A DNA stretch of 64,000 nucleotides from Podarcis muralis (lineage: Eukaryota), in contig NC_135670.1 of NCBI RefSeq assembly GCF_964188315.1, positions 6,634,001 to 6,698,000 on the forward strand, given 5' to 3'. This document shows positions 16,982 through 60,873 of the stretch, piece after piece. Under the pieces are notes generated by a model. The model saw only the letters and a program-made list of their open reading frames with translations. It was not told the origin of the DNA and ran no database searches. The position numbers and the translations under genes were made by a program. Position 1 is the stretch's first letter. Every line of letters starts with the position of its first letter.

Positions 16982-17033
<52 letters not shown>

Positions 17034-20190: not shown

Positions 20191-20623
20191 GTCAGCAAGC
20201 TAAGCTCTAGGCAAAGAAAACAAGAGTTTTGTTCTGTGCATGGAATGATCAACTGAAATCCTGTCTGACAGTAACACAAGCTGCTGAGAAGAGATAGCCA
20301 GCTACTTCAGCTACTTTAGAGAGATTGAATAGGGACAGGGTATCTGCTGATCTGTCTGAAAGCAAGGAACATGCAAGCAATTTTATGTTTCATTAAATTT
20401 GTTTAGCAGAAGAATGAAAATGCAAAGATCAAAAGTGTCAGAAAGGGCAAGGCGCATTGTGGGGAGCTGAGGAAATGCTAACGATTTTGCATCATTTTTC
20501 TTTCTTATTAAAGTAATTAGGGGGCATGAGACGTTTCAGAAACAGTTTGCTAATTAAAGCCTCGGGGTGAAGGGGGTGTATCCCAGCTAGCTGTGGGGCC
20601 ATCAGGGGACACAGCCAAAATAG

Positions 20624-20710
20624 TATAAAAGGGCTCCTTGGGCTGAGAAAGCCCAACAGCTTCACTTGACTTGATCTCCTTCTCTCCATTTCTACTCCTT
20701 GGAAACTTTG
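20624..20710 (+). promoter_or_regulatory. TATA box and non-coding exon 1 of A2
   Basis: tataaaa 20624-20630, donor GT 20711-20712, acceptor 22776-22777. Confidence 0.75.
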
Positions 20711-22445
20711 GTAAGTCAAGTCTACCTATATATGTTAGAATGTTATCTTTAAATGATTCTTGAACTTTCAAGTGGTTCAGATTTTTGAACTCCAAGAGAA
20801 CACCAAAATTCTATTAATCTTTGAGATGTGTAGATCTTGCACCAAGAAATTAAATTACTTAATGTCATCGGCTGGTTTCTTTGTGTTTCTATCTGTGTAT
20901 ACACAGTCTTCTGAAAACTGGAAGCTGCCTTCTCCCAGGTTGTAGTGTTAGCCTGTTGAGCTCAGTATTACCTACAATGACCACCAGTAAAAATCCAGGA
21001 TTTCTGATCAGATTCTGTCCCTGCCCAGCTGCACCCAGCCCATGACATTCTGCATGCAGAGCAGATGTTCTCCCAGTTAACTACAGCCTCTCCCCCTGCC
21101 CGCCACCCATCTTATAGTATTTGAAACATGCCTTCTGAAGTAGGTTTCTCTGTTTTCTTGGGAAGCTGGGATTCTGGGTCCCATTCTACCACACATTGTG
21201 CAAATCCAGCATTTATCATTACTGTGAGCAAAACTGTGGGATAACTAGCTGCATATGCTTAAGTCTTTTTAATTCATGAAGGGGTTAAGACCATAGAGTA
21301 AGCTGTCTTGCCAGGGTTAGCTCACCTTGAGAGGGGTTAGATAATCAAGGTTTTGTTCTCTCCCGGTCTAAGTGAGAAGTTCAGCAAGTGAAGACGCTAA
21401 GCTGGTTGATCCAGCTTTGCCGCATGACTCACACAAGCCAATCTTGAGTTCCCATAAAAAATAATTAGGAACTTTCATCATGCTGCAATTAAGCCCAGTA
21501 CTGCCTGTGCAACTTGCCTGACTGATGTGTGGAAAAGCACATGAAACTGACCTTTGAAGGGTTTGTAAGTAAACCAATTTTAACATTGCCAGCCGTGTGC
21601 TCTTTTCCTATGATCAGGAAGGAGGGAAGTTTTGGAACTTGCAAGGGCATGTTTTAAAGGTATAACAGTTTTTATGTCCATGCTTTATTTCCAGGAATTC
21701 TCTTTTATACCTTTTTTTTTTTTCATTGAACCAAAAAATTATAGCACTCATCACTCTCTATGGTTGGATACATGTGCCAGTGCTCAATGGAATCCTTTTC
21801 ATATTTCACCAATCGTTGTAACCTTCACGGGGACTGACACCAGAGGGCACCACAGACTAGTATTAATGTGTTTTTTGTGGAACAAAATTTCATGGAAGAT
21901 CTGTGCTTAAAAAGCAGGGTGTTGGTCCATCTAACTCAGTATTGTGTACAGTATAGCTTGTGGTGTTTTTTTTTATGAAAACAAGTATTTAGCTGCCTTG
22001 TACTGACTCAGAATCTTGGTCCATATAGCTTGGTATTGTCTACAATGACCAGCTGTGACTCTCCAGACCAGGTTTCAAAGAGGGAGCATTTCCCAGCTCA
22101 ACCTGGAGATTCCTGCGACTGAACTTGAGACTTTCTGCATGCAAAACATATGTCCTTCCCCCAGAAAGTGATGGTCCTTCCCCTACAAAGAAAGAGCTCA
22201 GACCTCATGGCTCTAACCTTCCTGGAATTACCAGGGACTGGATTTAGGACCCACAAGGAAGAGAAGAGCTGTAGTGATGATGTAGAGGACAATACAGAAT
22301 CCATGAATTAGGGCATAATGTTTGACGAATAATGGAAGACAGGTGATTTTCATTCAGTTAAGGTGGTATGAGTTGGGTGAAATGGAAATAAGGGAAATAT
22401 CCTAATACATCAGGCAGAACCCCTGCACTACCCATTGAAGTGATG

Positions 22446-22795: not shown

Positions 22796-23293
22796 ATGGT
22801 TGACTGTGGTCCATCCTGCGCTGTCCCATCCTGTGCTTCCACCCCCACTGTTGGGTTCGGCTCAGCAGGAGGCCTTGGCTATGGTGGTCTCGGCTATGGA
22901 TTGGGAGGTCTCGGCTATGGAAATAGGGGATTCGGCTACGGATTTGGTGGTCTCGGCTATGGCTATGGAGGTGCTGAAAGAGCAGCCAACCTCGGAGTCC
23001 TGGCAGGAGTTGCCCCATCCTGCATCAACCAGATCCCACCAGCAGAGGTCGTGATCCAGCCACCTGCCTCCGTTCTGACCATCCCAGGGCCCATCCTCTC
23101 TGCCAGCTGTGAGCCTGTGGCTGTTGGAGGCAACACTCCATGTGCTGTTGGTGGTTCCGGGATCGTAGGAGGCTATGGCTATGGGGGCTTGGGCTTTGGG
23201 TCTGGTCTCCTTGGAAGCTCTGGAGGTTTCGGCTATGGTTTGGGCTACGGGAGGGGAAGGAAGTTCGGGCGTCGTTTTAGCATCTGTGCATAG
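22796..23293 (+). CDS. Gly/Tyr-rich corneous beta-protein A2, 165 aa
   Basis: CBP core; near identical to A1. Confidence 0.95.
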   Translation: MVDCGPSCAVPSCASTPTVGFGSAGGLGYGGLGYGLGGLGYGNRGFGYGFGGLGYGYGGAERAANLGVLAGVAPSCINQIPPAEVVIQPPASVLTIPGPILSASCEPVAVGGNTPCAVGGSGIVGGYGYGGLGFGSGLLGSSGGFGYGLGYGRGRKFGRRFSICA

Positions 23294-23523: not shown

Positions 23524-23713
23524 GCTTTTGGCGCATTACAGTAACCCATGTGTGTTGGTTTTTGTAACACTTGGCCTCAGTTCCTCACAGCAAGCTGTCC
23601 AGCTGACTGAAGTGACTTTTTCTCTAAATTAAAACTGGAATGTGTCTCAAGGCATGTTTGCCAACAAAAAATTGACAGATGTTTGGAGGTTTTATGCTTC
23701 AACTTTAAGAGAT

Positions 23714-23844
23714 TCTGTGCTGGTAGGAAGCTATGGCTATGGGTCATTGGAAGCAATTTTGGTGGCTACCTTGGAGGTCTGAGGAGGGGTGGGCTCTTTG
23801 GAAGGAAATCCCTGCTGGGATGTTGCGGTAGTATGTGCTTTTAG
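23714..23844 (+). pseudogene. Stranded C-terminal CBP fragment downstream of A2 (frameshifted)
   Basis: Paralogue of 6303-6440 with a 7-nt deletion (ggtctcc). Confidence 0.8.
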
Positions 23845-24554
23845 ATATATTGAACTCTTGAAGAACATATGTGTGATGATGCCAGGAATGACCCTGAATG
23901 GGTGAAGATGATGCAGTGTCTTGTCCTTGGACCATCATAGAAGCCAACATCTTTTGCATGAATTCTAGCCATGTTTCATTTCTCCTGCTTTTCCCCTTGA
24001 AAGTATTTAATCCATGAATGAGTTCAGAGCCCCATTGTGCTCTGTGTTTCTTTGCCTTCCTCATCTCCTTCTTCTTGCACAATTGCCAACTTGATACTTT
24101 CCACCTTTTCATTAAAGCTCATTCTTTATTCTAATATGGCTCTCTCTTCATTTGGCACCTTTTGGCAACAATTCCTCAGAGGAGGAAATCTTCCTCTTAA
24201 TCTATAATACCATGGTCATTGATCAACATTACAAACACATTGTCCAGGTGTCTTTAAAAAATGGGGGGGGGGGGGAATGACAAATAGCATAAAATACAGT
24301 GTGAAACAAAGTAAATACAAGCAGCACAGAATGAAATAAAATGGGCATCAACATTTGAAACATCTAAATCATAGCACAAACTCCAAAGAGGAAAATTTCA
24401 GAACGTTAAATGTCAGTTCTTGGTGAATTTTGCTTGCTGCAGCACAATACATTTCTATGCTGAGAGTGATAGGTGGGCTTTGATTTGAGATAAGTAGAAT
24501 GGTAGTCTCTCACACTGGCACATTCTTGGAGTATGCTGGCCTAGGGAGACCCTG

Positions 24555-24770: not shown

Positions 24771-25013
24771 CACAACCTTCTTGACACATATAATCCAAAA
24801 ATGGTTGCCACACATTATAGAAAAGATGGGGGTTAGAATTCTCCTTGGTCTCACAATCTGGCACATCAGATTTTCAGCCACAGCAATTGTCCAAGCTCTA
24901 GACTACCATGCTTTAATGTTCAAGCCCAAGGCAGTGCGCCATCACATGACTATTTCCATGTGTGCCACTATGAGGAGAAACATAAAAAGTACTTTATGTG
25001 CAATTGGTGGAGT

Positions 25014-25445
25014 TGTTGTTGTTGTTTAGTCGTTTAGTCGTGTCCGACTCTTCGTGACCCCATGGACCAGAGCACGCCAGGCACTCCTGTCTTCCACCGC
25101 CTCCCGCAGTTTGGTCAGGCTCATGTTTGTAGCTTCGAGAACACTATGCAACCATCTCATCCTCTGTCGTCCCCTTCTCCTTGTGCCCTCCATCTTTCCC
25201 AACATCAGGGTCTTTTCCAGGGAGTCTTCTCTTCTCATGAGGTGGCCAAAGTATTGGAGCCTCAACTTCACGATCTGTCCTTCCAGTGAGCACTCAGGTC
25301 TGATTTCCTTAAGAATGGATGCGTTTGATCTTCTTGCAGTCCATGGGACTCTCAAGAGTCTCCTCCAGCACCATAATTCAAAAGCATCAATTCTTCGGCG
25401 ATCAGCCTTCTTTATGGTCCAGCTCTCACTTCCATACATCACTAC
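25014..25445 (-). mobile_element. Bov-B LINE 3' end
   Basis: YGSESWTIKKADRRRIDAFELWCWRR peptide; TSD tggtggagt 25005-25013 / 25446-25454. Confidence 0.9.
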
Positions 25446-25679
25446 TGGTGGAGTAGACATGCCTTTTATTCCAAGCAAAGCAAGTTGATGGGTAGGTTCA
25501 TTTTGTATATTAAACTGAGTTCTTTAAATACCAGAATCAAAAATGGATAAGCAGATTTGAAAAACCCCTACATATGTACAGTACTAAGATCCAGTACTAA
25601 GATTGATGTCACCCCTGGTATCATGTGGGAAATCCAGAAAACAGTATGAGACCAGCTATGTAAGAGTTTCAAAGAGAGG

Positions 25680-28550: not shown

Positions 28551-28653
28551 GTTTTAACAGAAAGAAAAACAACTAATTAAAATCAAACCATGGCCATGCT
28601 ACACTAGGAGTTTTAGTCAAGATCTGTTCTTTACATTGGGGAGGAACCAGTTA

Positions 28654-28912
28654 CCGTATTTTTTGCTCTATAAGACGCACCAAACCACAAGACGCACCTA
28701 GTTTTTGGAGGAGGAAAACAAGAAAAAAAATATTCTGAATCTCAGAAGCCAGAACAGCAAGAGGGATCGCTGCGCAGTGAAAGCAGCAATCCCTCTTGGT
28801 GTTCTGGCTTCTGGGATAGCTGCGCAGCCTGCATTCACTCCATAAGACGCACACACATTTCCCCTTACTTTTTAGGAGGGAAAAAGTGAGTCTTATAGAG
28901 CAAAAAACACGG
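28654..28912. mobile_element. Tc1/mariner MITE (CCGTATTT family)
   Basis: TIRs ccgtattttttgctctataagac / gtcttatagagcaaaaaacacgg, TA TSD; second copy 34001-34259. Confidence 0.85.
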
Positions 28913-29159
28913 TACATAAAAAAACAACAACCCTGAGTCTACATAGACCTGATTGTTCCTAGCCAGTGGCATAGAGTGGGGTGGGGGAGTAGAGGGGCGA
29001 TTCCCCAGGCACAAAATTGGTAGGGGTGCAAAATTTCAACACCTGGTGCTGTCTCAATACAGCTGTGCAATTCCAGTGCTGGGCCCAGTTGAAAATGGCT
29101 TCTCTATGTGAAGCAGGAAGTGACCTCTCCAGAAAGTGACCTCTCCAGTCAACAGAATG

Positions 29160-29540: not shown

Positions 29541-31334
29541 TGCTCTTATCTCTGTGGTTGCAATCTCCTGGGTGACGCGGACGCTGTTAGGTGGCTGAAT
29601 GTGCACACATATTCTGTCCATTTAATCCCACTCTGTATGGCCCCAGGAACTGGCAACCCATGCTTTGCCACTGTTCCCAGCCTTCCCAGTTTCTTGATCT
29701 TCTTAATACGCAAATGTTCTGCACATGGGATATTTCATTAATTGTCACCTACACTTTTGGGAAATACCATTTGTTGTAGTGCTTCACAACTCCCTAGGCA
29801 TCCACAACCGACATAAAACCCCTTTCCCCAAAATACATTTACTCAATTAGTCAAAGGAAATGCCTCAGATAGTTTTCAATCTGCTGTCTATATTTACTTC
29901 CTTTTTGAAGTCAGTCATTTCAGCAAAGTCTGGTGGAGTGAGAAATCCTATTCTTGAATCCATCTCTTTCTGTATCTGTTTCATCACAAACTGAATTAGC
30001 TCCCTGCATATTAGACATGGACTCCGCCTCAACAGAATGACCGCTCCCCGCTTAAAACGGGGGCACACTTTGCGTGGACGCGAGCAGCCCCTAGATCTGG
30101 AGCGGCTCCAACAGCATAGGCTTGGTTTGCCTTCCCTCAGGTGGGATACCTGGAGGTCTCCGCCTACCTCAGTCATTTGCCTAATCCCACCTGGGGGAAG
30201 CGTTGCCAAGGAGACCAGGCCAGGTAGGGGAGGGATTACCTGCCCACACAATAGAGGGAGGATCTTACCTGGGAATCCTCACTTGGCTCCAGAGCTTCTC
30301 CCACCCTACCCACCCTCAGTTAATGTCTTATTTTGCAGGTTAACTTTTCTTCACAGGTTTCGCAGGTTAACTTTTCTTCACAGGTATGCGGGCGCTGCTA
30401 CGTAAGGTCGCTGTTAAAGGGCTGGAAAGGAATTTCCCTTCATTGGCAGGTTTCGCCTTTCCCGTAGCAAAACGTCACAACTTTGGCGGTATCAGGCCTT
30501 GGGCGGAATCCTTTAGTCCATCTTCCTCTTTGCAGCGGCGATACCAGGGTTCCCCGTTAAAGGGGTTTCTGAAGGGAGGCTTTGGCCATGCGCCGAAAGG
30601 TTGTCATTGCTCTCCCCTGCGGCGGCGGTGTAACGGGGGCGGCTATCTCTGCTTGAACATATGTTCTCCAGAGCCGGCCCATCCCCCCCACACACACACA
30701 CTGGATAACCCTGATGCTCCCTAGGTCCCTGGCTGGGGACTGGGGAGGGAGAACGCCCAATGCCTGAGCCAAGGTCTACCCACATTTGAAATTTAATAAA
30801 GTTGTGGCCAATTTAATCCCATAGCACGTTGTCTCGAGTCATTATTCCACATGACGGGGGGACCGCGGGGGATCTGGGGACTCCGCCTGTCCACGCAAAA
30901 CAGTCTCCAGGTTTGCTTACAGCAGCTTTTACCTTTTGACACCTAGTGACAGGGTAAACCTTCTCTCTGGCTCCCAGTACATTCTGCCTAAGAATTTTGG
31001 CTCATCTTTCCCTCCCCAGTAAATCTTTGCCTCAGACACGGGAGCTAATCTGGATGCCGTCAGTGACCTTTGCTGTTTTGTGAGGAAACATCTTTTTGGA
31101 AGTATTTAGATCTTCTCTTAATAAAGTGATTCCTGTACCTGTGTCTAGAGATGCCCAATGTGCGTTGTTATTCATTAAAACTTCCTCCATGAACTCAGTG
31201 TCAAAGTTTGCGGCTTTCTCAAACCTCATTTACAGAGTTTGACCTTTTTGGAGGGCTTGGACTGGTTTGGACTCAGTCTGACCCTTTTGTTTCTTTCCCC
31301 CTTATGGTTTTGATCGATGGGCTACTTTTAAAAA

Positions 31335-31693
31335 CTAGGGCCAGGGCCTTTTCAGTACTGGCCCCGACTTGGTGGAATGCTCTGTCCCAAGACACCAGGG
31401 CCCTGCGGGACTTGACATCTTTCCACAGGGCCTGCAAGACAGAGCTGTTCTGCCTGGTCTTTGGTTTGGACTCGGTCTGACCCTTATGTTGCCCTCCCCT
31501 TATGGTTTTGATTCATGGGCTACTTTTAAAATGAGGCTGCATTTTAATTTGCATTTTAACCTGTATTTTAAATCGGGTTTTTTTTCTATTATGTTTTTAT
31601 TGTAATTTTACTGGTGTTAGCCGTCCTGAGCCCAGCTCTGGCCGGGGAGGGTTCGGTATAAATAAAAATTATTATTATTATTATTATTATTAT
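31335..31693 (+). mobile_element. L2 3' end with (TTA)n tail
   Basis: RARAFSVLAPTWWNAL peptide; shorter mirror copy at 40575-40790. Confidence 0.8.
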
Positions 31694-32600
31694 GGCGAGA
31701 TGTCTACAGCTTTTGCCATTTTAACTGGGGAGCTGGGGCACTAGGTGCTACTGACCTGACTTGGCACCTTTCTCTGTGCAGTTTGCTTGCCTCTCTCCTC
31801 ATCTTCAAGGCTAATTGGTCTGCTAACACAACCACCTCGTGGACATTCTGAGGATTTCTGTCTCTCAAAATTCGAGAACATGTATAGAGAGACTTTTTTC
31901 TCCCTTTCTCATCTTGCTAGAAGCAGGGGTCATGCAGGGGACCAGAATCTTGCAGAATTCAGTGAAAGCAAAAGGATATAGTTCTTCACAAAATGCATAA
32001 ACTTCTAGATTCAGTACCAGAAGATGTGGTGATTGCCACTAGTTTGGATGGCTTTAAATGCTGATTACAGATCAAAAAAATGAAGTCAAGGTTTAAATGT
32101 GCTTAATATATTTCTTTAACTCGTGTATGCAATAATTTAAAACTTTATCAAAATACAGTATTTGACTGAGAGGCTGGATAATCCTGCACCATTTGACTAC
32201 ATTATCTCCCATCAAAAATATGTTATTGTCCAAAGTCTTGTAACATATCGATTACAAAAGCTGTAGTCCACAATACATTCCACACTGTGTACGTATGCAA
32301 ATGTTGCAAAACTACAAAAGATTATCTAGCTATTATGACTGTTGCTTCTCTGAATAATTAATGGTTTGAGGCACTCTAAAAGGGGACTTGTTTTGAAAAA
32401 GGGGGAAATGATAATTCTCTCAAGGCGAATGGACCTTATTTTAACCACATAGAACTATACCATTCAGGGGGACAGAGAGAAAGTTTTAGTTTGGCCAAAA
32501 ACTGCTTCAGAAAGCTGAGGCCCTGGACACCTTGCTATGCGGAACTGAGGCTTTACATTTAAAAACCAGGACAAACAGGTTATTAGAATGCAGAACAAGC

Positions 32601-32606
32601 TTTATT
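32601..32606 (-). terminator. Poly(A) signal of B2
   Basis: AATAAA on minus strand in conserved context. Confidence 0.8.
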
Positions 32607-32811
32607 GAAAAGGTCAAAGTAAGAGCATTGAAAGGGGCAAAGAAGAAAATCGGTGTAGAAGGATCTTTTTTCTTCTGCACTCTGAAGCAAAGAACGGAGG
32701 ATGAATTCCAGGAGCGATTGCTTGAGTTCATCTTTTCTGAACCATGGCCGATAGATCTGTATCAAGCCCTCTGATTATCAGTTCAGGATATGCTTCTCAG
32801 GTTCATTTGGC

Positions 32812-33303
32812 CTATGAACAGATGCTAAAACGACGCCCGAACTTCCTTCCCCTCCCGTAGCCCAAACCATAGCCGAAACCTCCAGAGCTTCCAAGGAGGC
32901 CAGACCCATAGCCCAAGCCCCCAAAGCCTCCTACGATCCCGGAACCACCAACGGCACATGGAGTGTTGCCTCCAACAGCCACAGGCTCACAGCTGGCAGA
33001 GAGGATGGGCCCTGGGATGGTCACAACGCAGGCAGGTGGCTGGACCACGACCTCTGCTGGTGGGATCTGGTTGATGGGTTTAGGGATAATCCCATCTAGG
33101 ATGCCAAGGTTGGCTGCTCTTTCAGCACCTCCATAGCCATAGCCGAGACCACCAAATCCGTAGCCGAATCCTCCATTTCCATAGCCAAGACCTCCCAATC
33201 CATGGCCGAGACCACCATAGCCAAGACCTCCTGCTGAGCCAAACCCAACAGTGGGGGTGGAAGCACAGGATGGGACAGCGCAGGATGGACCACAGTCAAC
33301 CAT
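32812..33303 (-). CDS. Gly/Tyr-rich corneous beta-protein B2, 163 aa
   Basis: CBP core preceded by variant GILDGIIPKP; acceptor 33322-33323. Confidence 0.95.
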   Translation of the reverse strand: MVDCGPSCAVPSCASTPTVGFGSAGGLGYGGLGHGLGGLGYGNGGFGYGFGGLGYGYGGAERAANLGILDGIIPKPINQIPPAEVVVQPPACVVTIPGPILSASCEPVAVGGNTPCAVGGSGIVGGFGGLGYGSGLLGSSGGFGYGLGYGRGRKFGRRFSICS

Positions 33304-34000
33304 TGTTGGGTGGAGGTGAGTCTGAAACCAAAAACACCAAGGGAGAAAATAAGTGTGGGGTACATCACTTCAATGAGGGTGGGCCACAGTCAACCATGGG
33401 TGAAGAAGAATCTAAAGTATACAACTGAAGAACTGAGTTGAATATGGAGCATGAAAACCAAAGAGGGCCAAATAATTATAAAAGCTCAGATATAACATAC
33501 TTCAGGGAGAGTCAGTGTGTAGTTTTTTTCTGATGTTGCAGACTTCAATTTGCATCAGACCCAACCAGCATGAACAACAGAGAACGGTGATGAGACTATA
33601 GGAACCTCACTATAACTACTGAGTGAGAACTACACCCCTGTGGTAGATGCTGTAGAAAAATAAGAAAATACTCACATACTTTGTTGGTCTCCATGTTTCC
33701 ATGTTCGTGCTCTGAATCAAGAAGCTTGTTATGTCAACAATTCTATGAAGCATTTTTTGACAGGCTGGACCACTATAAACTATTATCAACCCACTATAAA
33801 CTATTATCGACCCAATCTGTTATCTATTTACCTGGGATTAAGCATTAGTGAATACAATTGGGTTTACTTATTAGTAAAACGCAGAGTTTTGTGCTATAAA
33901 AGGCAGAAATGTGTGTATATATGTGTGTGTGTGTGTGTGTAAATGACATTTAGGAAGAGAGATAATAGAAACTGGTGCCACGTTCTAAATATCACAATGA

Positions 34001-34259
34001 CCATATTTTTTGCTCTATAAAATGCACCAGACCACAAGACGCACCTAGTTTTTGGAGGAGGAAAACAAGAAAAAAAATATTCTGAATCTCAGAAGCCAGA
34101 ACAGCAAGAGGGATCACTGCGCAGTGAAAGCAGCAATCCCTCTTGCTGTTCTGGCTTCTGGGATAGCTGCGCAGCCTACATTCACTCCATAAGATGCACA
34201 CACATTTCCCCTTACTTTTTAGGAGGGAAAAAGTGAGTCTTATAGAGCAAAAAATACGG
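34001..34259. mobile_element. Tc1/mariner MITE in B2 intron
   Basis: Near copy of 28654-28912. Confidence 0.85.
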
Positions 34260-34697
34260 TATATTTAACAGGCATACATGACATTACCATGCAGATCTTC
34301 TCCTACTATGCTTGCTGAATGGCACAACCAGACTTCAACTCCCATCTGCCTCAGCCACCATAGACAATGGCCATGGAATATAGGAGCTATAGTTCATAAA
34401 CATCTGCAAAGCCCCTGGTTCTCCTTCCCGGTTCTAAACATATGTCCAAAGAATCAGGGATGATTTATTTTATAAACCTGCAGGGGGTGAAGGAGGGATG
34501 GGGAACCTGTGCCCCTGAAGTTGTTGCAGGATCCCAAGTCCTCTCAGCCAGCATTCCCAATGGACAAGGATGATGGAAGCAACATTGCAAGGAACACAGG
34601 ATGCCCATCCCTGCTCTAATTGGAAGAGCCATCTAGCCTTACTTTAATGTGAACCTATGACAAGCTTGGAAATATCCCCCCAAGAAAATAGGCTTAC

Positions 34698-34779
34698 CTG
34701 CTGCTTTGGTGAGATGTAGTGAAGACAGGAGAGTCAGATGAAGCTGTTGGAGAAACTGGAAGAACTTTGAGCTTTTATA
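34698..34779 (-). promoter_or_regulatory. TATA box and non-coding exon 1 of B2
   Basis: tataaaa 34773-34779 (minus), donor gcag|gtaag (GT 34696-34697). Confidence 0.75.
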
Positions 34780-35144
34780 CAGTTCTGCAAGCTGCCCCCG
34801 TCACCAAGGGACTGCCTCTTCTGACTAATTTTTTATTTAGTTGTTGACAATTTAATGCGCAAAATTACTTCACTAAGCACAAAAGGTCACAAAATTAAGT
34901 GGTTGTAATAATGAAAGACTAATAGTCTTAACACCATTCCCACTCCCTTCCTTTTAATTTTGCTGACTTCGAGTCTGATGCTTGAAACCAGATGCACCCA
35001 GAGGGAGCAGATAGAGATCTTCAAAGCGCTTTCATCAGCTTAAGGGACTCTAGGACATCATCAAAGATTTTGCATATGCATACCGGATTCTAAGAGATCT
35101 CCAGTATCAGTGTCCTCACGAAAATCCATCAGCACACAGTTGTA

Positions 35145-35389
35145 CAGTGGTACCTCGGGTTAAGTACTTAATTCGTTCCGGAGGTCCGTTCTTAACCTGA
35201 AACTGTTCTTAACCTGAAGCACCACTTTAGCTAATGGGGCCTCCTGCTGCTGCTGCCGCACCACCGGAGCACAATTTCTGTTCTCATCCTGAAGCAAAGT
35301 TCTTAACCTGAAGCACTATTCTTGGGTTAGCGGAGTCTGTAACCTGAAGCATATGTAATCTGAAGCGTATGTAACCCAAGGTGCCACTG
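35145..35389. mobile_element. Tigger-like MITE
   Basis: cagtggtacctc TIRs, TA TSD. Confidence 0.85.
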
Positions 35390-35524
35390 TATTCAGTTTT
35401 CCCTCATCTACACATTACTGCAGTGCAATTCTCTTTAATATCATACATTGTTGTGCCTTCTTTTCTTTAAGATATGCATTTGTAGGCACAGCTTACTCCA
35501 ATGTATTCATTTTGCTACCCATTA

Positions 35525-35753
35525 CAGTGCTACCTTGATTCTCGAATGACTTAGATGTCAAACAAATCAGCTCCCGAACCCCGAAAACCTGGAAGTAAGT
35601 GTTCCGGTTTTTGAATGTTTTTTGAAAGCCAAATGCCTGACACAATTTCCCCTTGACCGCAGGAAGCTCCTGCAGCCAATCGGAAGCCGCCCCTTGGTTT
35701 CCCAATGGTTTCAGGAGTCAAACGGATTAAGTTTGAGACCCAAGATTCCACTG
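35525..35753. mobile_element. Tigger-like MITE related to 195-418
   Basis: cagtgctaccttg / caagattccactg TIRs, TA flanks. Confidence 0.65.
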
Positions 35754-37976
35754 TACTTGGATAACTGCCCTGGGAAATGCAGACAGCTACAGATTTTGTA
35801 GCACAGCAATGTTTCAGTTTGCACATTGTTTCAAAAAAAGCTGAATAAATTTTATTTTTCTTTAAGGGTCAATTGAATTGAATTTCTCTCCTATTCCTAA
35901 ACTCACCTGCCTCTGTCACTGAAAAAACATTCCTGTTTCTACTTAAACTTACTCTACTTACTCTACTCTACTTACTCTACTTACTCTACTTGGTCCTTGT
36001 TCCCTACTGTCATGGTAGTGTATATGGTTCTGACAAGATATCACTGCACTCCCATCAGCTCCAGCCAGCATGGCCAATAGTCAGAAATTACGTGAGTGAA
36101 ATCCACAAAAACTAGGGGGAATCCTGTTGGCTACCTCTGCCCTGCTTAAATTAAGCCTAAAGCAAATACATCCAATCCAGGAATGGGGAATCTGTGGAAC
36201 CTCCTCTATTGCTGAGGTTCATATCCAAGGAAAAGTGTGCACAGTTCCCTATTCAGACCCGCTTCTTCTCATTTTGTAACAATGCCAGAGGCTGAGCTAT
36301 AAATGGCCAATAGCTATGATAGCAGTGTTTGAAATTCACCAGGTGCCAGGCTCATTTTGCACCTGGCTATTGGCCACTTGCGACCGAGTGCAGATGCCCA
36401 GGCACGAGGATGGTGCCTGATGTCTCCACCATCTGGAGGTGCATGACTGGGGATCCTTGGCTCTTGGCTGTTTTCATACACTAGCAGCACATCCTGTAGA
36501 ATTCTGTTATATTTTATCTGCACAATCAGAATGAACTTCATTCTGTTCTCAATGACCGACTTCAGGAACCAAAAGGTTGTATTAAAAAATACAACTTTTG
36601 AGCCCTCTGGCCCCAAAATGGCAACTAGGCATTCCGTTTTGGCAACTATAACCCTGGTTTAAGGAGCCATAGGTCACCTAGCTTATATACCTGAGCTTCC
36701 AACACTGTATGTATGTTCTATTTCCACTATCAGAGACTGTAAGCCTCTGAATACCAGTTGTGGGGAATCTCAGGTTGTGACTGTGCTGTTGCATTCAGAT
36801 CTTGTTTGCAGACTTCCCATTAGGAGATCTGGTTGGCCACTGGGAGAATAGGATGCTGGGCTTAATGGGTCACCTTTAGCCTGATCCAGGAGGATTCTTT
36901 TTTAGAACTACATAAATTCTTGGAGAATGAGGGTATCAATGGTCACGAGCCATGATGACTATGTTCTATAGTCAGCACGCTTTTGTATACCTATTGCTGG
37001 AAATCACTGCTGTTGGATTCAGGCCATGATGGTGAGCTTTCCATAGACATGTGTGATAACAGAATGCTGAATTAGATGGGCCTTTGGTCTGATCCAGTCG
37101 ACCATTTTTATGTCCTTAAATCCCTGGTTCTTCGAAAACAGCTGGCACTATATGAACCTTTTATTTCTTCAAATATCTTCTTTGAAAAGAATTCCCAAAT
37201 AGTTGTGGAAATTCTCATACGCTTCCTTGCTTTATTGCGTACACTTATCCATACCTCGCTATATGGTACGTTTGCATCATTGAAGACTGGAAGAGCCTTG
37301 TTCTCAATGACCAACCAGATGTCTATGGGAAGCCCAGCAAGCACAAACTGAGCATAACAGCAACTCTTCCCCCCCAAAAAAATATTCTCGATTATAATGC
37401 ATTTTTTGTATGTTATTTTCACTTAGTACAATATATGTCCATTCTTATGCACAATTTTGTACACATCAACTGGCTGCAGAACTGCATGAAATATTCGTGT
37501 AAGTGTGGATTTCATAGGAGTACACTGCTTCAGAAAACGCAACCTGGATCATTTCAGAAAACGCAACCTGGATCAAATTTCTCCCCCAATCTTACCTCCA
37601 ACAGTGGAGGTTAAACATAAACAAAACCTGCTATGTGTTGTGCACAGAATGACTAACTAAAATCCTGGGTATTAAAGTCAATTAGACTTCTGAGAAAATC
37701 AACAACTATTTTGAAAATAATGAACGGGGACAAAACACCTTTTGATCTGCCTGCCAGGAGGAACAGACAAAAATTTTTATTTTTCTTAATCTTTTATTAA
37801 CTTTGTCTTGTGGAAGAATAACTATGAAGAGAGTGGGGTGCTGTGAAAACACTTTTGCCTCGTTTCTTAATTAGGGCCATGATGCATTCCAAAAATTGCT
37901 TACTAATTAAAGCCGGAGGGGAAAGGAGGTGTATCCAAGCTGGATGTGGAGCCACCAGCAGATACAGATGAAATGG

Positions 37977-38063
37977 TATAAAAGGGCTCCCTGAGCTGAG
38001 ATCTTCCAACAGCTTCCTTTGGCTTCATCTCCTTCACTTCATTTCTACTCCTCTGAGACTTTG
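37977..38063 (+). promoter_or_regulatory. TATA box and non-coding exon 1 of A3
   Basis: tataaaa 37977-37983, donor GT 38064-38065, acceptor 38903-38904. Confidence 0.75.
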
Positions 38064-38922
38064 GTAAGTCAAGTGTATGCATATATGATGTTATATCTGA
38101 ATGATTCTTGCAGTGGTCAGAGCGTTCAGGTAACTGAACTCCAAGAGAAGGCTAAAATTCTATTACTCTGTGAATTGGGTAGATCTTCCTTCCACCAGGA
38201 ACCTTACACTCTTAAGTTGTTGGCTGTCTTCTTTTCTATATGTACCTTATGAAATCAAATATTTAGCTGCCTGATTCTGAGCGTTAGTCCATCTAGCTCA
38301 GTTTTGGCCACACTGATCAGCTGTAGTTCTCCAGAGTTTCAAGAAGGGAATCTTTAGCAACTCAATCTGCAGATTCCAAGGACCAAACCTGGGATGTTCT
38401 GAATGAAAACCACGTGTTCGGCCACTGAACAATTGTCCTCCCCCTAAAATTATAGTAAGGTACTAATCTTCATGGTTCCAAATAAATACCTGACTCAAAT
38501 GAGCATAGGGAGTTGTCCTGTACCATGACAGACCATTGGAATCCCTAGTTCAGTTTTACCTACTCAGATTGGCCGTTGTTCTACAGGCCTTGAAGCAGGG
38601 GACATTCCTAGACTATCCTGAAATTATCAGGGATTGGATTTGGGATCCACAACGAAGAGAAGGGCTGTAGTAACAAAAGCAGAGAAGAATAAAGGTTTCA
38701 GGCATAAGGGCTTAATGTTTTCAGAATTATCAAAGACAGCTGATTTTCAGTGATGGAGAAAGGAAAATGGTTTGAGTTTAGTGAACTGGGAATGGGTAAA
38801 ATATCCTACTGCCACAGGATGATTATGTCTGAAATATTCTCCCCACTGTCCATTGAAGTGATGTACCCCACACTTATTTTGTCCCTTGGTGTTTTTGGTT
38901 TCAGACTCACCTCCACCCAACA

Positions 38923-39426
38923 ATGGTTGACTGTGGTCCATCCTGTGCTGTCCCATCCTGTGCTTCCACCCCCACTGTTGGGTTTGGCTCAGCAGGAGGT
39001 CTTGGCTATGGTGGTCTCGGCCATGGATTGGGAGGTCTCGGCTACGGTTTTGGAGGACTCGGCTATGGATATGGAGGCCTGGGCTATGGAAATGGAGGTG
39101 CTGAAAGAGCAGCCAACCTTGGCATCCTAGATGGGATTATCCCTAAACCCATCAACCAGATCCCACCAGCAGAGGTCGTGGTCCAGCCACCTGCCTGCGT
39201 TGTGACCATCCCAGGGCCCATCCTCTCTGCCAGCTGTGAGCCTGTGGCTGTTGGAGGCAACACTCCATGTGCCGTTGGTGGTTCCGGGATCGTAGGAGGC
39301 TTTGGGGGCTTGGGCTATGGGTCTGGTCTCCTTGGAAGCTCTGGGGGCTTCGGCTATGGTTTGGGTTACGGGAGGGGAGCACTCCTTGGAAGGAAGTTCG
39401 GGCGCCGTTTTAGCATCTGTTCATAG
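38923..39426 (+). CDS. Gly/Tyr-rich corneous beta-protein A3, 167 aa
   Basis: CBP core preceded by GILDGIIPKP, as in B2. Confidence 0.95.
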   Translation: MVDCGPSCAVPSCASTPTVGFGSAGGLGYGGLGHGLGGLGYGFGGLGYGYGGLGYGNGGAERAANLGILDGIIPKPINQIPPAEVVVQPPACVVTIPGPILSASCEPVAVGGNTPCAVGGSGIVGGFGGLGYGSGLLGSSGGFGYGLGYGRGALLGRKFGRRFSICS

Positions 39427-39631
39427 ACCAATTAAACCTGAGAAGCATATCCTGAACTGATAATCAGAGGGCTTGATACAGATCTATCGGCCATGGTTCA
39501 GAAAAGCTGAACTCAAGCAATCGCTCCTGGAATTCATCCTCCGTTCTTTGCTTCAGAGTGCAGAAGAAAAAAGATCCTTCTTCACCGATTTTCTTCTTTG
39601 CCCCTTTCAATGCTCTTACTTTGACCTTTTC

Positions 39632-39637
39632 AATAAA
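39632..39637 (+). terminator. Poly(A) signal of A3
   Basis: AATAAA in conserved context. Confidence 0.8.
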
Positions 39638-41110
39638 GCTTGTTCTGCATTCTAATAACCTGTTTGTCCTGGTTTTTAAATGTAAAGCCTCAGTTCCGCA
39701 TAGCAAGGTGTCCAGGGCCTCAGCTGTCTGAAGCAGTTTTTGGCCAAACTAAAATTGGAACATTTGCAGGACATCTTTCTCTCTGTCCCCCTGAATGTTA
39801 TAGTTCTTTGTGGTTAAAATAAGGTCCATTCGCCTTGAGAGAATTATCATTTCCCCCTTTTTCAAAACAAGTGCTGGGTCCCCTTTTAGAGCGCCTCAAA
39901 CCATTAATTATTCAGAGAAGCAACAGTCATAATAGCTAGGTAATCTTTTGTAGTTTTGCAACATTTGCATACATACACAGTGTGGAATGTATTGTGGAAT
40001 GCAGCTTTTGTAATCGATATGTTACAAGACTTTGGACAATAACATATTTTTGGTGGGTGATAATGTAGTCAAATGCTGCAGGATTATCCAGCCTCTCAGT
40101 CAGATACTGTATTTTGATAACAGTTTTAAATTATTGCATACACGAGTTAAAGAAATATATTAAGCACATTTAAACCTTGACTTCATTTTTTGATCTGTAA
40201 TCAGCATTTAAAGCCATCCAAACTAGTGGCAATCACCACATCTTCTGGTACTGAATCTAGAAGTTTATGCATTTTGTGAAGAACTATATCCTTTTGTTTC
40301 CACTGAATTCTGCAAGATGCTGGTCCCCTGCATGACCCCTGCTTCTAGCAATATGAGAAAGGGAGGAAAAAGTCTCTCTATACATGTTCTCGAATTCTGA
40401 GAGACAGAAATCCTCAGAATGTCCACGAGGTGGTTGTGTTAGCAGACCAATAAGCCTTGAAGAGGAGGAGAGAGGCAAGCAAACTGCACAGAGAAAGGTG
40501 CGAAGTCAAGTCAGTAGCACCTAGTGCCCCAGCTCCCCAGTTAAAATGGCAAAAGCTGTAGACATCTTGCCCTAATAATAATAATAATAATAATTTTTAT
40601 TTATACCGAACTCTCCCCGGCCAGAGCCTGGCTCAGGACAGCTAACACCAGTAAAATTACAGTAAAAACATACCAGAAAAACCCCCGATTTAAAATACAG
40701 GTTAAAATTCAATTTAAAATGCAGCCTCATTTTAAAAGTAGCCCATAGATCAAAACCATAAGGGGAAAGAAACATGAGTCAGACTGAGTCCAAACCAGTC
40801 CAAGCCCTCCCAAAAGGTCAAACTCTGTAAAATGAGGTTTGAGAAAGCCGCAAGCTTTGACACCGAGTTAATGGAGGAAGTTTTAATGAATAACAACACA
40901 CATTGGGCATCTCTAGACACAGGTACAGGAATCGCTTTATTAAGAGAAGATCTAAATACTTCCACAAATATGTTTCCTCACGAAACAGCAAAAGTCACAG
41001 ACCGCATCCAGATTAGCTCCCAGTGTCTGAGGCAAAGATTTACTGGAGAGGGAAAGATGAGCCAAAATTCTTAGGCAGAATATACTGGGAGCCGGAGAGA
41101 ATGGTTGACT

Positions 41111-41263
41111 GGTTCTGGGCTGGTAGGAGGCTATGGCTATGGGTCTGGTCTCCTTGGAAGCAACTTCGGTGGCTACCTTGGAGGTTCCCTTTATGGCCTG
41201 AGGAGGGGTGGGCTCTTTGGAAGGAAGGCCCTGCTGGGACGTCGTGGTAGTGTGTGCTATTAG
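41111..41263 (+). pseudogene. Stranded 50-codon C-terminal CBP half with own 3' UTR and AATAAA (41560-41565)
   Basis: Open frame GSGLVGGYGYGSGLLGSNFGGYLGGSLYGLRRGGLFGRKALLGRRGSVCY*; no core box or in-frame start immediately upstream. Confidence 0.85.
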
Positions 41264-42681: not shown

Positions 42682-43585
42682 GTCTCAGGGTTCGTGCTGA
42701 GGAGGGCTGCACTGAGGAGCAATGGCCGGAGTCTCCCCCTCCCCCTGCTCCTGAATCTTCCCAGGAGCAGTGGGACAGTATATGTCAGGAGCATAGCCGA
42801 GCCAAGAGATGAAGGAGATGGAAGAGAAACAGGGTGTGACTCTCAACATGAAAGACTGCAATTAGAGCAGGAGGAAGTGGGCTCGGCCCCCTTTCTCCAA
42901 GTGTTCACTGAGTTAGTTAGAGCAGACACAGAAAGCTCACAAGACGAGGGAGGGGAAGAGATAGACAGCACTGGAGGGGTTGTTGTTTTTATTGTTGTTT
43001 AGTCGTTTAGTCGTGTCCGACTCTTCGTGACCCCATGGACCAGAGCACGCCAGGCACTTCTGTCTTCCACTGCCTCCCACAGTTTGGACAAACTCATGCT
43101 GGTATCTTCGAGAACACTGTCCCACCATCTCGTCCTCCGTCGTCCCCTTCTCCTTGTGCCCTCCATCTTTCCCAACATCAGGGTCTTTTCCAGGGAGTCT
43201 TCTCTTCTCCTGAGGTGGCCAAAGTCTTGGAGCCTCAGCTTCACGATCTGTCCTTCCAGTGAGCACTCAGGCCTGATTTCCTTAAGAATGGATAGGTTTG
43301 ATCTTCTTGCAGTCCATGGGACTCTCAAGAGTCTCCTCCAGCACCATAGTTCAAAAGCATCAATTCTTCGGCGATCAGCCTTCTTTATGGTCCAGCTCTC
43401 ACTTCCATACATCACTAAGGGGTTACTAAGCAACAATCAGATAGGCAGAGGACTGAGCGCTCATCCTTGGACAGTGTAGATTTCCCCCCTTCCCTCTGCT
43501 CACGTCCAAAGTGCTGAAAAGGTCAGATTGCAACAGTAGTGCAAAAGGGGAAAGGTGGGACGTTGGCATTTTTCCTGTTGTGACA
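42682..43585 (+). mobile_element. Putative solo LTR interrupted by Bov-B
   Basis: 5' part resembles 63321-63793; ends in tgaca; Bov-B inserted with TSD aggggtt. Confidence 0.4.
42982..43417 (-). mobile_element. Bov-B LINE 3' end
   Basis: Bov-B C-terminal peptide; TSD aggggtt 42975-42981 / 43418-43424. Confidence 0.9.
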
Positions 43586-45281: not shown

Positions 45282-45560
45282 CAAAGGTCCGTATAGTAAA
45301 AGCCATCCACCCTAGACAGCATCTTAAAAAGCAGAGACATCACCTTGCCAACAAGGGTCCGTATAGTTAAAGCTATGGTTTTCCCAGTAGGGATGTATGG
45401 AATTGAGAGCTGGACCATAAAGAAGGCTGATCGCTGAAGAATTGATGCCTTTGAATTCTGGTGCTGGAGGAGACTCTTGAGAGTCCCATGGACTGCAAGA
45501 AGATCAAACCTCTCCATTCTGAAGGAAATCAGCCCTGAGTGCTCACTGGAAGGAAAGATC
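45282..45560 (+). mobile_element. Bov-B internal fragment
   Basis: gagagctggaccataaagaaggctgatc Bov-B sequence, truncated at both ends. Confidence 0.8.
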
Positions 45561-45859: not shown

Positions 45860-46085
45860 CACGAGTACCTCGGGTTAAGAACTTAATTCGTTCTGGAGGT
45901 CCATTCTTAACCGGAAACTGTTCTTAACCCGAGGTACCACTTTAGCTAATGGGGCCTCCTGCTGCCACTGCACCGCCACCGCGCAATTTCTGTTCTCTTC
46001 CTGAAGCAAAGTTCTTAACCCGAGGTACTATTTCTGGGTTAGCGGAGTCTGTGACCTGAAGCGTCTGTAACCCGAGGTACCACTG
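45860..46085. mobile_element. Tigger-like MITE
   Basis: Same family as 8155-8396; right TIR intact. Confidence 0.8.
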
Positions 46086-51432: not shown

Positions 51433-51963
51433 ATGGTTTCCTGTGGCCCATCCTGTGCTGTCCCATCCATTGCTTCCTGCCCCACTGTTGGGTTTGGATC
51501 AGCAGGAAGTCTTGGCTCCGGAGGTCTTGGCTATGGTGGTTTTGGCTATGGAGGCCTTGGCTCTGCCGGTTTTGGCTATGGCGGTCTTGGCCATGGTGGC
51601 TTTGGCTATGGCAGTGGTTATGGCATTGGTTCAGGAGCAAGCACCAACTCAGCACAGCTTGGCACCTTGGATGGGATTATCCCACAACCCATCAACCAGA
51701 TCCCACCAGCAGAGGTCGTGATCCAGCCACCTGCCTGCGTTGTGACCATCCCAGGGCCCATCCTCTCTGCCAGCTGTGAGCCTGTGGCTGTCGGAGGCAA
51801 CACTCCATGTGCCGTTGGTGGGCTGGCAGGAGGCTTTGGTGGCTATGGGGGTGGCCTTCTTGGAAGCTATGGGGGTTATGGCTTGGGCTCTGGCAGCTTC
51901 AGAAGGGGTGGAATCATTGGAAGGAAGTCTCTTGTGGGACGTTGTGGGAGCGTTTGCTTGTAG
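51433..51963 (+). CDS. Gly-rich corneous beta-protein C, 176 aa
   Basis: Core INQIPPAEVVIQPPACVVTIPGPILSASCEPV; tail RKSLVGRCGSVCL. Confidence 0.95.
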   Translation: MVSCGPSCAVPSIASCPTVGFGSAGSLGSGGLGYGGFGYGGLGSAGFGYGGLGHGGFGYGSGYGIGSGASTNSAQLGTLDGIIPQPINQIPPAEVVIQPPACVVTIPGPILSASCEPVAVGGNTPCAVGGLAGGFGGYGGGLLGSYGGYGLGSGSFRRGGIIGRKSLVGRCGSVCL

Positions 51964-60740: not shown

Positions 60741-60873
60741 CCAGTTAGGGATGCGGGATGTACGGTAATACTTCTGCCTGTAAACCTGGTGAGCTGCTTC
60801 TAGTCACTGTTGGCAATAGTAGGCTAGATGAAACAGTGGTCTAACTTGATATTGAACAGCTTCCTGTGTGACT

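What the first reader, a model, noticed from the sequence alone, without database searches (positions are those of the whole stretch)
30957..41106. 2.3-kb inverted repeat enclosing both promoters: a potentially invertible promoter cassette
A3 has an A-type promoter and intron, but its CDS, 3' UTR and ~1.5 kb of flank are an inverted copy of B2. B1 has a B-type flank and A1/A2 do not, so the direction looks B2 to A3. The 5.5-kb spacer (33376-38850) holds the B2 and A3 TATA boxes and first exons back to back, and the arms start just upstream of both splice acceptors. A crossover between arms would flip the spacer and swap promoters between two intact CDSs without breaking either. B1/A2 have the same geometry with shorter (~0.57 kb) arms. 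The flipping itself is inference.
Basis: partly seen in the sequence, partly recalled or inferred. Interest (0 to 1): 0.7.

Follow-up and report, generated by a model that had tools for sequence, protein, structure and literature searches.

The report
Inverted scale-protein gene copy, lizard
Two neighbouring lizard scale-protein genes facing away from each other share a real 2.3-kb mirror-image repeat, because one gene's coding end was overwritten by a backwards copy of its neighbour; nothing shows that the promoter-bearing stretch between them actually flips.

Summary
The inverted repeat is real. The arms are 30957-33375 and 38851-41106, 2,419 and 2,256 nt long and about 94% identical counting indels. 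They enclose a 5.5-kb spacer.

The window is a cluster of corneous beta-protein (beta-keratin, PF02422) genes in a lizard. Each arm holds 54 nt of intron, the splice acceptor, the whole coding sequence, the 3'UTR and about 1.5 kb of downstream flank.

A3 is a chimera: its own promoter, exon 1 and intron, then a B2-type body. Just past the arm lies a leftover tail of its older coding sequence (41110-41260), which A1 and A2 also carry. RNA contigs join the A-type exon 1 to an exon 2 of the A3/B2 type.

Copying between paralogs is ongoing. A3 holds a B1-like 61-nt tract, and another individual carries a B1/B2 hybrid intron.

Flipping is geometrically possible by recombination between the arms, but it is untested. 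Only short contigs were available, and the reference orientation is the ancestral one shared by all units. There is no recombinase and no sign of a programmed switch.

The scan had already found a similar backwards paste 15.6 kb upstream in this cluster (s1-179016), and arm-converting inverted pairs elsewhere in this genome.

The parts
30957..33375 (-). Left arm (B2 side). In gene sense: 54 nt of intron, acceptor, 5'UTR, B2 CDS, 3'UTR (AATAAA at 32606) and about 1.65 kb of downstream flank.
38851..41106 (+). Right arm (A3 side): an inverted B2-type copy with the same content as the left arm, but lacking the 201-nt stretch.
33376..38850 (.). Spacer holding both promoters, both non-coding first exons and most of both introns. 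It also holds SINE-like repeats (33995-34264, 35143-35396). No Pfam-recognisable ORF.
32812..33303 (-). B2 coding sequence, 163 aa, corneous beta-protein (PF02422).
38923..39426 (+). A3 coding sequence, 167 aa, corneous beta-protein (PF02422). It is 95% identical to B2 as protein.
34698..34779 (-). B2 TATA box (34779-34773) and non-coding exon 1, with the donor GT at 34697-34696. This B/C-type promoter is shared with B1 and gene C.
   Evidence: Exon 1 had depth 0 in RNA run X17.
37977..38063 (+). A3 TATA box (37977-37983) and non-coding exon 1, with the donor GT at 38064-38065. This A-type promoter is shared with A1 and A2.
   Evidence: RNA contigs run from 38063 straight into exon-2 letters.
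41110..41260 (+). Relic C-type coding tail (about 48 codons, open, ends in a stop), left over from A3's older exon 2. The same relic follows A1 (6302-6440) and A2 (23713-23840, frameshifted).
33375..33397 (-). Relic coding start (ATG plus about 7 codons, with its own older acceptor just upstream) in the B2 intron, abutting the arm boundary. B1 has the same relic, with the ATG decayed.
39345..39405 (+). Third-party conversion tract. At four SNPs and the 12-nt ALLG indel, A3 has the B1 state while B2 has the A1/A2 state.
39045..39091 (+). A3-specific rearrangement of the glycine-rich repeat: 14 differences in 47 nt, unique among the five genes.
31285..31485 (-). A 201-nt stretch present only in the B2 arm, between 71-nt direct repeats (31263-31333 / 31462-31531). 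It is either a duplication in B2 or a deletion in A3.
31333..31693 (.). Dispersed repeat inside the arm, with 69-71% copies at 9739-10074 and 17008-17355. It was copied along with the flank.

Best explanation
The repeat is the footprint of gene copying inside a tandem family of corneous beta-protein (scale 'beta-keratin') genes. B2 and A3 are head-to-head neighbours. A 2.26-kb stretch of B2 was copied backwards into A3. It ran from 54 nt before B2's splice acceptor through the coding sequence, the 3'UTR and about 1.5 kb of downstream flank. The inner end of the copy lies in sequence that all five genes already shared. The outer end is a non-homologous junction at about 41106-41113, right in front of a leftover tail of A3's older coding sequence. 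A3 is therefore a chimera: its own TATA promoter, exon 1 and intron drive a B2-type protein. Shown: the anatomy, the relic tail, the B-type flank inside the A3 arm, the splice of A-type exon 1 to an A3/B2-type exon 2, and short conversion tracts from other paralogs. Inferred: the repair mechanism (homology-primed copying from the inverted neighbour, finished by end joining), the direction, and a rough age. Outer-arm divergence is 4.6% and inner non-coding divergence is 1.9%. That suggests on the order of 10-20 million years, with later arm-to-arm copying or constraint near the gene. The inverted repeat makes the spacer liable to rare inversion by non-allelic homologous recombination, as with any such repeat. 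It is not a switch, and the orientation seen here is the ancestral one.
For: All six ORFs match PF02422. Arm alignment. A3's upstream sequence matches A1 and A2, while its body matches B2 at 94% against 76-81% for A1, A2 and B1. 3'UTR identity is 98.2% for B2-A3 and 67-70% for every other A/B pair. B1 shares the B-type flank 32483-32341 with B2 and A3, but A1 and A2 do not. The relic C-type tail directly follows the arm in A3 and sits at the same place after A1 and A2. The outer junction has no extended homology. RNA contigs of X17 continue from 38063 into exon-2 letters of the CACCC (A3/B2) type, and from 38904 back into the end of exon 1. Conversion tracts: A3 39345-39405 is B1-like, and a B1/B2 hybrid contig occurs in another individual. 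Divergence is 1.9% inner against 4.6% outer, Fisher p=0.01. The B1-A2 and B2-A3 spacers are colinear, with the A promoter always on the side of the A relic tail. The published EDC gene model is a non-coding exon 1 behind a TATA promoter, and gene conversion is suspected in EDC subfamilies (PMC11431283).
Against: The outer end of the A3 arm falls within a few bases of where the shorter shared segment of A1 and A2 meets the same relic tail. That is an odd coincidence for a second, independent copying event. It would be explained if the long copy were the original state and A1/A2 had lost 1.3 kb. However, the 73 nt that A1 and A2 have there show no significant match to the A3 arm. B2's native flank cannot be followed in B1 beyond about 140 nt, because a LINE lies there, so the direction rests on limited sequence. 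No second species' genomic sequence was available to date the event.
Confidence: 0.75

Rival explanations
1. Flip-flop polymorphism. The spacer exists in both orientations among wall lizards because crossovers between the arms recur. The B2-type and A3-type coding sequences would then exchange promoters in some haplotypes.
For: The geometry allows it without breaking either gene. The arms hold perfect-identity runs of 235, 143 and 111 nt. [quoted passage not shown] A yeast 24-kb region flips between 4-kb paralog repeats (PMC9731477). The arms or their paralogs do exchange sequence. The A-type exon 1 is present in RNA run X17 while B2's exon 1 had depth 0, so the two promoters seem to differ in use.
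Against: No read or contig shows the other orientation. All three paralogous units keep the A promoter on the side of the A relic tail, so no flip has been fixed since the units arose. In the human data, recurrence depends mainly on repeat length, mostly 10 kb or more. These arms are 2.3 kb at 94-96%. A-type exon-1 letters at the B2 acceptor (33322) are ambiguous: exon 2 is identical in both arms for 42 nt, and 283 records fit two places.
Confidence: 0.1
2. Old palindrome kept alike. The 2.3-kb inverted copy dates from the origin of the A genes, before the tandem units formed. It stays 94-99% alike only in this pair through continuing arm-to-arm conversion. A1 and A2 have lost most of it.
For: Both ends of the shared segment coincide in A1, A2 and A3. 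Identity is graded, 1.9% divergence near the gene and 4.6% at the outer end. Other inverted pairs in this genome were judged to be old and conversion-maintained (s1-188846 and s1-152571, not checked here).
Against: A1's and A2's 73 nt before the relic tail do not match the A3 arm (score 13 against a shuffle mean of 12). B1-A2, the same kind of pair, shows no such long arms. The outer arm is still 94-97% alike with no sign of an old, decayed layer.
Confidence: 0.2
3. Programmed invertible promoter element: a regulated, recombinase-driven switch of the kind known in bacteria.
For: Only the geometry: promoters sit inside, coding sequences sit in the arms.
Against: The arms are kilobase-long paralog copies, not short recombinase sites. 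No ORF in or beside the spacer matches any Pfam family, and there is no Rfam match. To my knowledge, no such system is known in vertebrate germline genes.
Confidence: 0.01
4. Assembly artefact: a falsely duplicated or misjoined inverted copy.
For: The window has four N runs, none within 15 kb of the repeat.
Against: The arms differ by about 5% and by several indels, so they are two distinct sequences. Contigs of an independent individual (X2) run from the unique spacer 28 and 29 nt into each arm (33348-33903 and 37915-38879). That is just short of the tool's 31-nt bridging rule, because all paralogs share the next letters. RNA and DNA contigs of a second species label carry both the B2-specific (33215-33322, 0 differences) and the A3-specific (38982-39078, 1 difference) versions.
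Confidence: 0.02

Closest known systems
Corneous beta-protein (beta-keratin) genes of the squamate epidermal differentiation complex, as described for Podarcis muralis and Anolis (PMC11431283)
   Same: PF02422 core, glycine-rich flanks, a non-coding exon 1 behind a TATA box, the whole coding sequence in exon 2, tandem paralogs in both orientations, and suspected gene conversion within subfamilies.
   Different: That paper does not describe these particular genes. Its supplement holds neither peptide searched. It also does not describe chimeric promoter/body genes, relic coding starts and tails, or inverted repeats enclosing promoters.
Interlocus (ectopic) gene conversion and inverted segmental duplication that create chimeric paralogs
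   Same: Donor-type sequence is embedded between acceptor-type flanks. The boundaries are sharp. There are later short tracts from third paralogs and a hybrid allele in the population.
   Different: The copied tract runs about 1.4 kb past shared homology and ends in a non-homologous junction. It is therefore not a classical two-ended conversion. A copying event finished by end joining is inferred, not shown.
Inversions between flanking inverted repeats by non-allelic homologous recombination: human 'inversion toggling' (10.1101/2021.12.20.472354) and the yeast chromosome XIV flip/flop region between paralog repeats (PMC9731477)
   Same: Paralogous genes form inverted arms around a few-kb to tens-of-kb spacer, and there are signs of exchange between the arms.
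   Different: In those cases both orientations were observed. Here only one has been seen. These arms are shorter and less alike than those of most recurrent cases. What is unusual here is that the breakpoints would fall inside introns and swap promoters between intact genes.
Bacterial invertible promoters (fim- and hin-type invertons)
   Same: A promoter-bearing segment lies between inverted repeats.
   Different: Those use short repeats, a dedicated site-specific recombinase and frequent programmed switching. None of these is present here.

Membership tests
Corneous beta-protein (beta-keratin) gene of the EDC | Beta-sheet core box (Pfam PF02422 'Keratin') | tested here: met
   All six ORFs score 33.6-37.7 bits against a 25-bit cut-off.
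Corneous beta-protein (beta-keratin) gene of the EDC | Non-coding exon 1 behind a TATA box, one intron, entire coding sequence in exon 2 | tested here: met
   TATA boxes, GT donors and AG acceptors were read. RNA contigs join the A-type exon 1 end (38063) to the exon 2 start (38905). The B2 model rests on sequence and on an organism-B contig that ends exactly at the acceptor.
Corneous beta-protein (beta-keratin) gene of the EDC | Location in the EDC between its marker genes | not tested
   The window holds only CBP genes and retroelement remains. Flanking EDC markers lie outside it.
Chimeric paralog made by inverted copying or ectopic conversion | Donor-type sequence bracketed by acceptor-type sequence on both sides | tested here: met
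   A-type intron up to 38850, B2-type 38851-41106, A-type relic tail from 41110.
Chimeric paralog made by inverted copying or ectopic conversion | The donor's private flank is present in the acceptor and in the donor's own lineage | tested here: met
   B-type flank 32483-32341 is shared by B1, B2 and A3 but not by A1 or A2. This is only about 140 nt, because a LINE interrupts B1's flank.
Repeat-mediated (NAHR) inversion polymorphism / flip-flop region | [quoted passage not shown] | tested here: met
   The arms are 2.3-2.4 kb, 94-96% identical, with a longest perfect run of 235 nt.
Repeat-mediated (NAHR) inversion polymorphism / flip-flop region | Both orientations observed among haplotypes or species | not testable with these tools
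   Only Logan contigs and short RNA reads were on offer.
Repeat-mediated (NAHR) inversion polymorphism / flip-flop region | Arm-to-arm homogenisation | tested here: inconclusive
   Inner non-coding divergence is 1.9% against 4.6% outer (p=0.01). Constraint on the 3'UTR could give the same pattern.
Programmed invertible promoter (inverton) | Short recombinase-binding inverted repeats and a site-specific recombinase gene nearby | tested here: not met
   The arms are kilobase paralog copies. Ten ORFs in and beside the spacer have no Pfam match.

The most novel reading that the evidence does not exclude
The 5.5-kb spacer really is polymorphic in orientation among wall lizards (or differs between lacertid species). 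Two almost identical scale-protein coding sequences would then trade an active A-type promoter and a differently used B-type promoter. This would be a vertebrate flip-flop whose breakpoints lie in introns and swap whole promoters between intact genes. More broadly, a self-contained 'exon-2 cassette' (acceptor, coding sequence, polyA signal) may be repeatedly pasted in either orientation into neighbouring genes of this cluster, creating such repeats again and again.
Probability: 0.1. Interest if true: 0.55.

Novelty: new member of a known kind. Interest (0 to 1): 0.3.

Why it matters
The locus shows in detail how a fast-evolving skin-protein family is remodelled. A complete coding cassette is copied backwards into a neighbour, so a different promoter captures it, and leftover gene starts and tails remain as witnesses. 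This explains why coding sequences in the cluster are 91-97% alike while their promoters and 3'UTRs are not. It also warns annotators that relic exon pieces lie beside intact genes. The repeat makes the locus a reasonable place to look for a small inversion polymorphism that swaps promoters. Because the two proteins are nearly the same, the expected effect would be on dosage or site of expression, not on protein function.

Tried and rejected
1. Orientation from reads. The one read-laying run (33101-39100; runs X23, X17, X15, X2) gave only contigs that end 28-29 nt inside the arms. The raw RNA run X23 had no coverage of these genes. Orientation could not be scored.

2. Swapped transcripts. A-type exon-1 letters do appear at the B2 acceptor (33322). 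However, A1 and A3 share the last 24 nt of exon 1, and exon 2 is identical in A3 and B2 for 42 nt. The same contigs therefore fit both places, and this was rejected as evidence.

4. Exact look-up of five of the proteins found none in the collection.

5. The supplement of the wall-lizard EDC paper holds neither of the two peptides searched.

6. I tested whether A1 and A2 keep a remnant of the long arm before their relic tail. The local alignment score equals the shuffle mean, so the test does not decide.

7. I searched for a relic coding tail downstream of B1 or B2 with tblastn and found none.

8. Rfam on 28-44 kb gave nothing. Pfam on the ORFs in and beside the spacer gave nothing.

9. The large protein searches were not run. 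The family is clear from Pfam, and those tools give no genomic context.
Full report
WHAT THE WINDOW IS

Six ORFs of 163-176 aa match Pfam PF02422, the beta-keratin (corneous beta-protein, CBP) core of reptiles and birds:
- A1 5386-5883 (+)
- B1 14303-14806 (-)
- A2 22796-23293 (+)
- B2 32812-33303 (-)
- A3 38923-39426 (+)
- C 51433-51963 (+)

A further core fragment lies at 55029-55193 (-). Retroelement remains lie between the genes, with RVT_1 and endonuclease hits. Earlier notes of this scan call the genome a wall lizard, Podarcis-type. I did not verify the species. The published description of the wall-lizard epidermal differentiation complex gives the gene model seen here: a non-coding first exon behind a TATA-box promoter and the whole coding sequence in the last exon. 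It also suggests gene conversion within subfamilies (PMC11431283).

CHECKING THE OBSERVATION

The inverted repeat is real and far beyond chance. BLAST of the window against itself pairs 30957-31333 and 31462-33375 with 41106-40730 and 40797-38851, at 93.7% and 94.2%. The repeat finder reports ungapped blocks of 94-98%. A global alignment gives arms of 2,419 and 2,256 nt.

The main difference between the arms is a 201-nt stretch found only in the B2 arm (31285-31485), between 71-nt direct repeats. There are also 12-, 20- and 7-nt indels.

The spacer (33376-38850) contains these elements:
- the B2 TATA box (34779-34773, minus strand) and B2 exon 1, which ends at 34698;
- the A3 TATA box (37977-37983) and A3 exon 1, which ends at 38063.

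Both arms start exactly 54 nt upstream of the exon 2 starts at 33321 and 38905. B1 and A2 form the same head-to-head geometry with 0.61-kb arms at 93%.

ANATOMY OF THE ARMS

In gene sense, each arm holds the following:
- 54 nt of intron;
- the acceptor and 18 nt of 5'UTR;
- the coding sequence;
- a 3'UTR with AATAAA 206 nt after the stop;
- about 1.45-1.65 kb of downstream flank, which includes a dispersed repeat (31333-31693, with copies at 9739-10074 and 17008-17355).

All five A and B genes share the same left boundary, the letters ATTGAAGTG.

Upstream of that boundary, B1 and B2 carry a relic of an older exon-2 start: an acceptor, a short 5'UTR, and an ATG plus about 7 codons at 33397-33375. 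In B1 the ATG has decayed.

Downstream, A1, A2 and A3 all carry an open relic of about 45 codons. It encodes a CBP C-terminal tail of the gene-C type, ending ...RRGGLFGRK.LLG..GS.C. and a stop (A1 6302-6440, A2 23713-23840 frameshifted, A3 41110-41260).

The common coding 'cassette' has therefore been pasted into older genes more than once, leaving their own starts or tails behind. An earlier finding 15.6 kb upstream of this window describes the same kind of event (s1-179016). I did not re-test that locus.

WHY A3 IS A CHIMERA, AND THE DIRECTION OF COPYING

A3's upstream 1.2 kb matches A1 and A2 upstream sequence: 37630-38850 against A1 3851-5310 and A2 20218-22414. From 38851 to about 41109 it matches B2 at 94%. 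From 41113 it again matches A1 (6302-6682) and A2 (23713-24189).

Segment by segment, the coding sequences of all five genes are 91-97% alike. The 3'UTRs behave differently: B2-A3 is 98.2% and A1-A2 is 94%, but every A/B pair other than B2-A3, and B1-B2, is only 67-70%.

B1 shares about 140 nt more of the flank (B2 32483-32341) with B2 and A3 than A1 and A2 do. The remaining about 1.4 kb is found only in B2 and A3. B1's flank is interrupted by a LINE.

The A3 arm is thus bracketed by A-type sequence and contains B-lineage flank, which supports B2 as donor. The outer junction (about 41106-41113) shows at most a few bases of shared letters. The inner end lies in sequence the genes already shared.

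I infer homology-primed copying from the inverted neighbour that ran on into B2's flank and was closed by end joining. This step is inference.

One observation is unexplained. The outer junction coincides with the place where A1's and A2's shorter segment meets the same relic tail. The alternative is that the long arm is original and A1/A2 lost 1.3 kb. That could not be confirmed: A1's and A2's 73 nt at that place score no better than shuffles against the A3 arm.

EVIDENCE THAT PARALOGS KEEP EXCHANGING SEQUENCE

Most of the 19 coding mismatches between A3 and B2, together with the ALLG indel, fall into two clusters:
- 39045-39091, an A3-only reshuffling of the glycine repeat. The other four genes read GNGGFGYGFGGLGYGYGG; A3 reads GFGGLGYGYGGLGYGNGG.
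- 39345-39405, where four SNPs and the 12-nt ALLG indel have the B1 state in A3 and the A1/A2 state in B2. This is a short conversion tract from a third gene into one of the two.

Outside these clusters, the arms differ by about 1% in the coding sequence. Non-coding sequence differs by 1.9% near the gene and by 4.6% further out (9/471 against 54/1178, Fisher p=0.01). This fits later arm-to-arm copying near the gene or constraint on the 3'UTR.

In the DNA contigs of another individual (X2), the only contig over 33348-33903 has the B1 state at every B1/B2 difference from 33383 to 33523. That is 10 SNPs and two deletions. From 33549 on it has the B2 state at more than 40 differences. The switch lies within a single 31-mer, so it is a real hybrid. 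It is either a conversion tract or an unequal-crossover allele.

WHAT THE READS SAY ABOUT THE GENES AND ABOUT FLIPPING

The 10-kb stretch 31001-41000, which spans most of the region, is held by 14 DNA runs from five studies, with 54-70% of its sampled words.

On 33101-39100, RNA contigs of X17 run from the last base of the A-type exon 1 (38063) straight into ACTCACCTCCACCC. That is the A3/B2 form of exon 2; A1, A2 and B1 have CATCC. The contigs also run from 38904 back into CTCTGAGACTTT. This confirms the splice of the chimera.

B2's exon 1 had depth 0 in that run, so the two promoters are probably used differently. Tissue is unknown.

A contig of a second species label (X15) matches B2's exon 2 without a difference and stops exactly at the acceptor. 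Another matches A3's private repeat version with one difference. Both versions therefore exist in a close relative.

Contigs of X2 run from the unique spacer 28 and 29 nt into each arm. That is just under the tool's 31-nt rule for bridging, because the next letters are shared by all paralogs.

None of this can show orientation. A crossover inside the arms leaves both inner junctions unchanged, and only molecules spanning a whole arm can tell. A-type exon-1 letters seen at the B2 acceptor are ambiguous: 283 records fit two places, and exon 2 is identical in both arms for 42 nt.

IS IT AN INVERTIBLE PROMOTER CASSETTE?

By geometry, yes. A crossover anywhere in the arms would flip the spacer and swap promoters while keeping both genes intact.

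As a mechanism in use, there is no support:
- The orientation here is ancestral. In all three units the A-type promoter lies on the side of the A-type relic tail and the B-type promoter on the B side, and the B1-A2 and B2-A3 spacers are colinear.
- There is no recombinase or any recognisable ORF in or beside the spacer, and no Rfam family.
- The two proteins differ only by the shuffled repeat and ALLG.

What remains is the ordinary liability of inverted repeats to non-allelic homologous recombination:
- In humans, most resolved balanced inversions have flanking inverted repeats of 200 bp or more. L1 pairs of about 97% identity flank inversions of median 5.6 kb. Recurrence, however, depends mainly on repeat length, usually 10 kb or more (10.1101/2021.12.20.472354).
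- In yeast, a 24-kb region flips between 4-kb paralog repeats (PMC9731477).
- Here the arms are 2.3 kb, 94-96% identical, with a longest perfect run of 235 nt.

A rare inversion polymorphism is plausible. I put it at about 10%, and a programmed switch at about 1%.

VERDICT

The chimeric origin and direction are supported. The 'invertible cassette' reading is a correct statement of what could happen, not of what is shown.

This is a new, well-documented example of known processes in a lizard CBP cluster: inverted copying, ectopic conversion, promoter capture and relic exon pieces. The scan had already met the same kind of event in the same cluster.

LIMITS

- The age estimate assumes a neutral rate of 1-2 x 10^-9 per site per year. 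That rate is my assumption, not a tool result.

Noticed in passing
window 33383-33549 (run X2): Another individual's only contig here is a B1/B2 hybrid. It has the B1 state at all 12 differences from 33383 to 33523, then the B2 state from 33549 on. It is either a polymorphic ectopic conversion tract or an 18.5-kb unequal-crossover allele between B1 and B2.
   Followed up: partly
window 35143-35396: This SINE-like element has copies at 8148-8398, 45865-46075 and 57505-57750. It is precisely absent from an 806-nt contig of the second species label (X15), which joins 35140 to 35388. It is therefore an insertion difference between close relatives.
   Followed up: no
window 33375-33397 and 14881-14903: B1 and B2 carry a relic of an older exon-2 start inside their intron, abutting the shared cassette boundary. 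The relic has its own acceptor, an ATG and about 7 codons; the ATG has decayed in B1. The B genes were therefore themselves overwritten once.
   Followed up: partly
window 6302-6440, 23713-23840, 41110-41260: Relic C-type CBP tails follow A1, A2 and A3. They are still open reading frames in A1 and A3 and frameshifted by a 7-nt deletion in A2. Gene predictors could mistake them for exons.
   Followed up: yes
window 28648-28917 and 33995-34264: Two copies of a 270-nt repeat, 96% identical, are very abundant in every run laid. It is a young, high-copy SINE-like family. One copy sits in the B2 intron.
   Followed up: no
window 25012-25448, 42985-43417, 60873-61302, 45337-45560: Four 93-95% identical copies of a retroelement end. 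Their ORF (about 145-150 aa, ...WTIKKADRRRIDAFELWCWRRLL...) has no Pfam match. It is a recently active family scattered through the cluster.
   Followed up: no
window 55029-55193 (-): A further CBP core box (74-76% to the A3, B2 and C proteins) with no long ORF listed around it. It is either a divergent CBP gene or a pseudogene.
   Followed up: no
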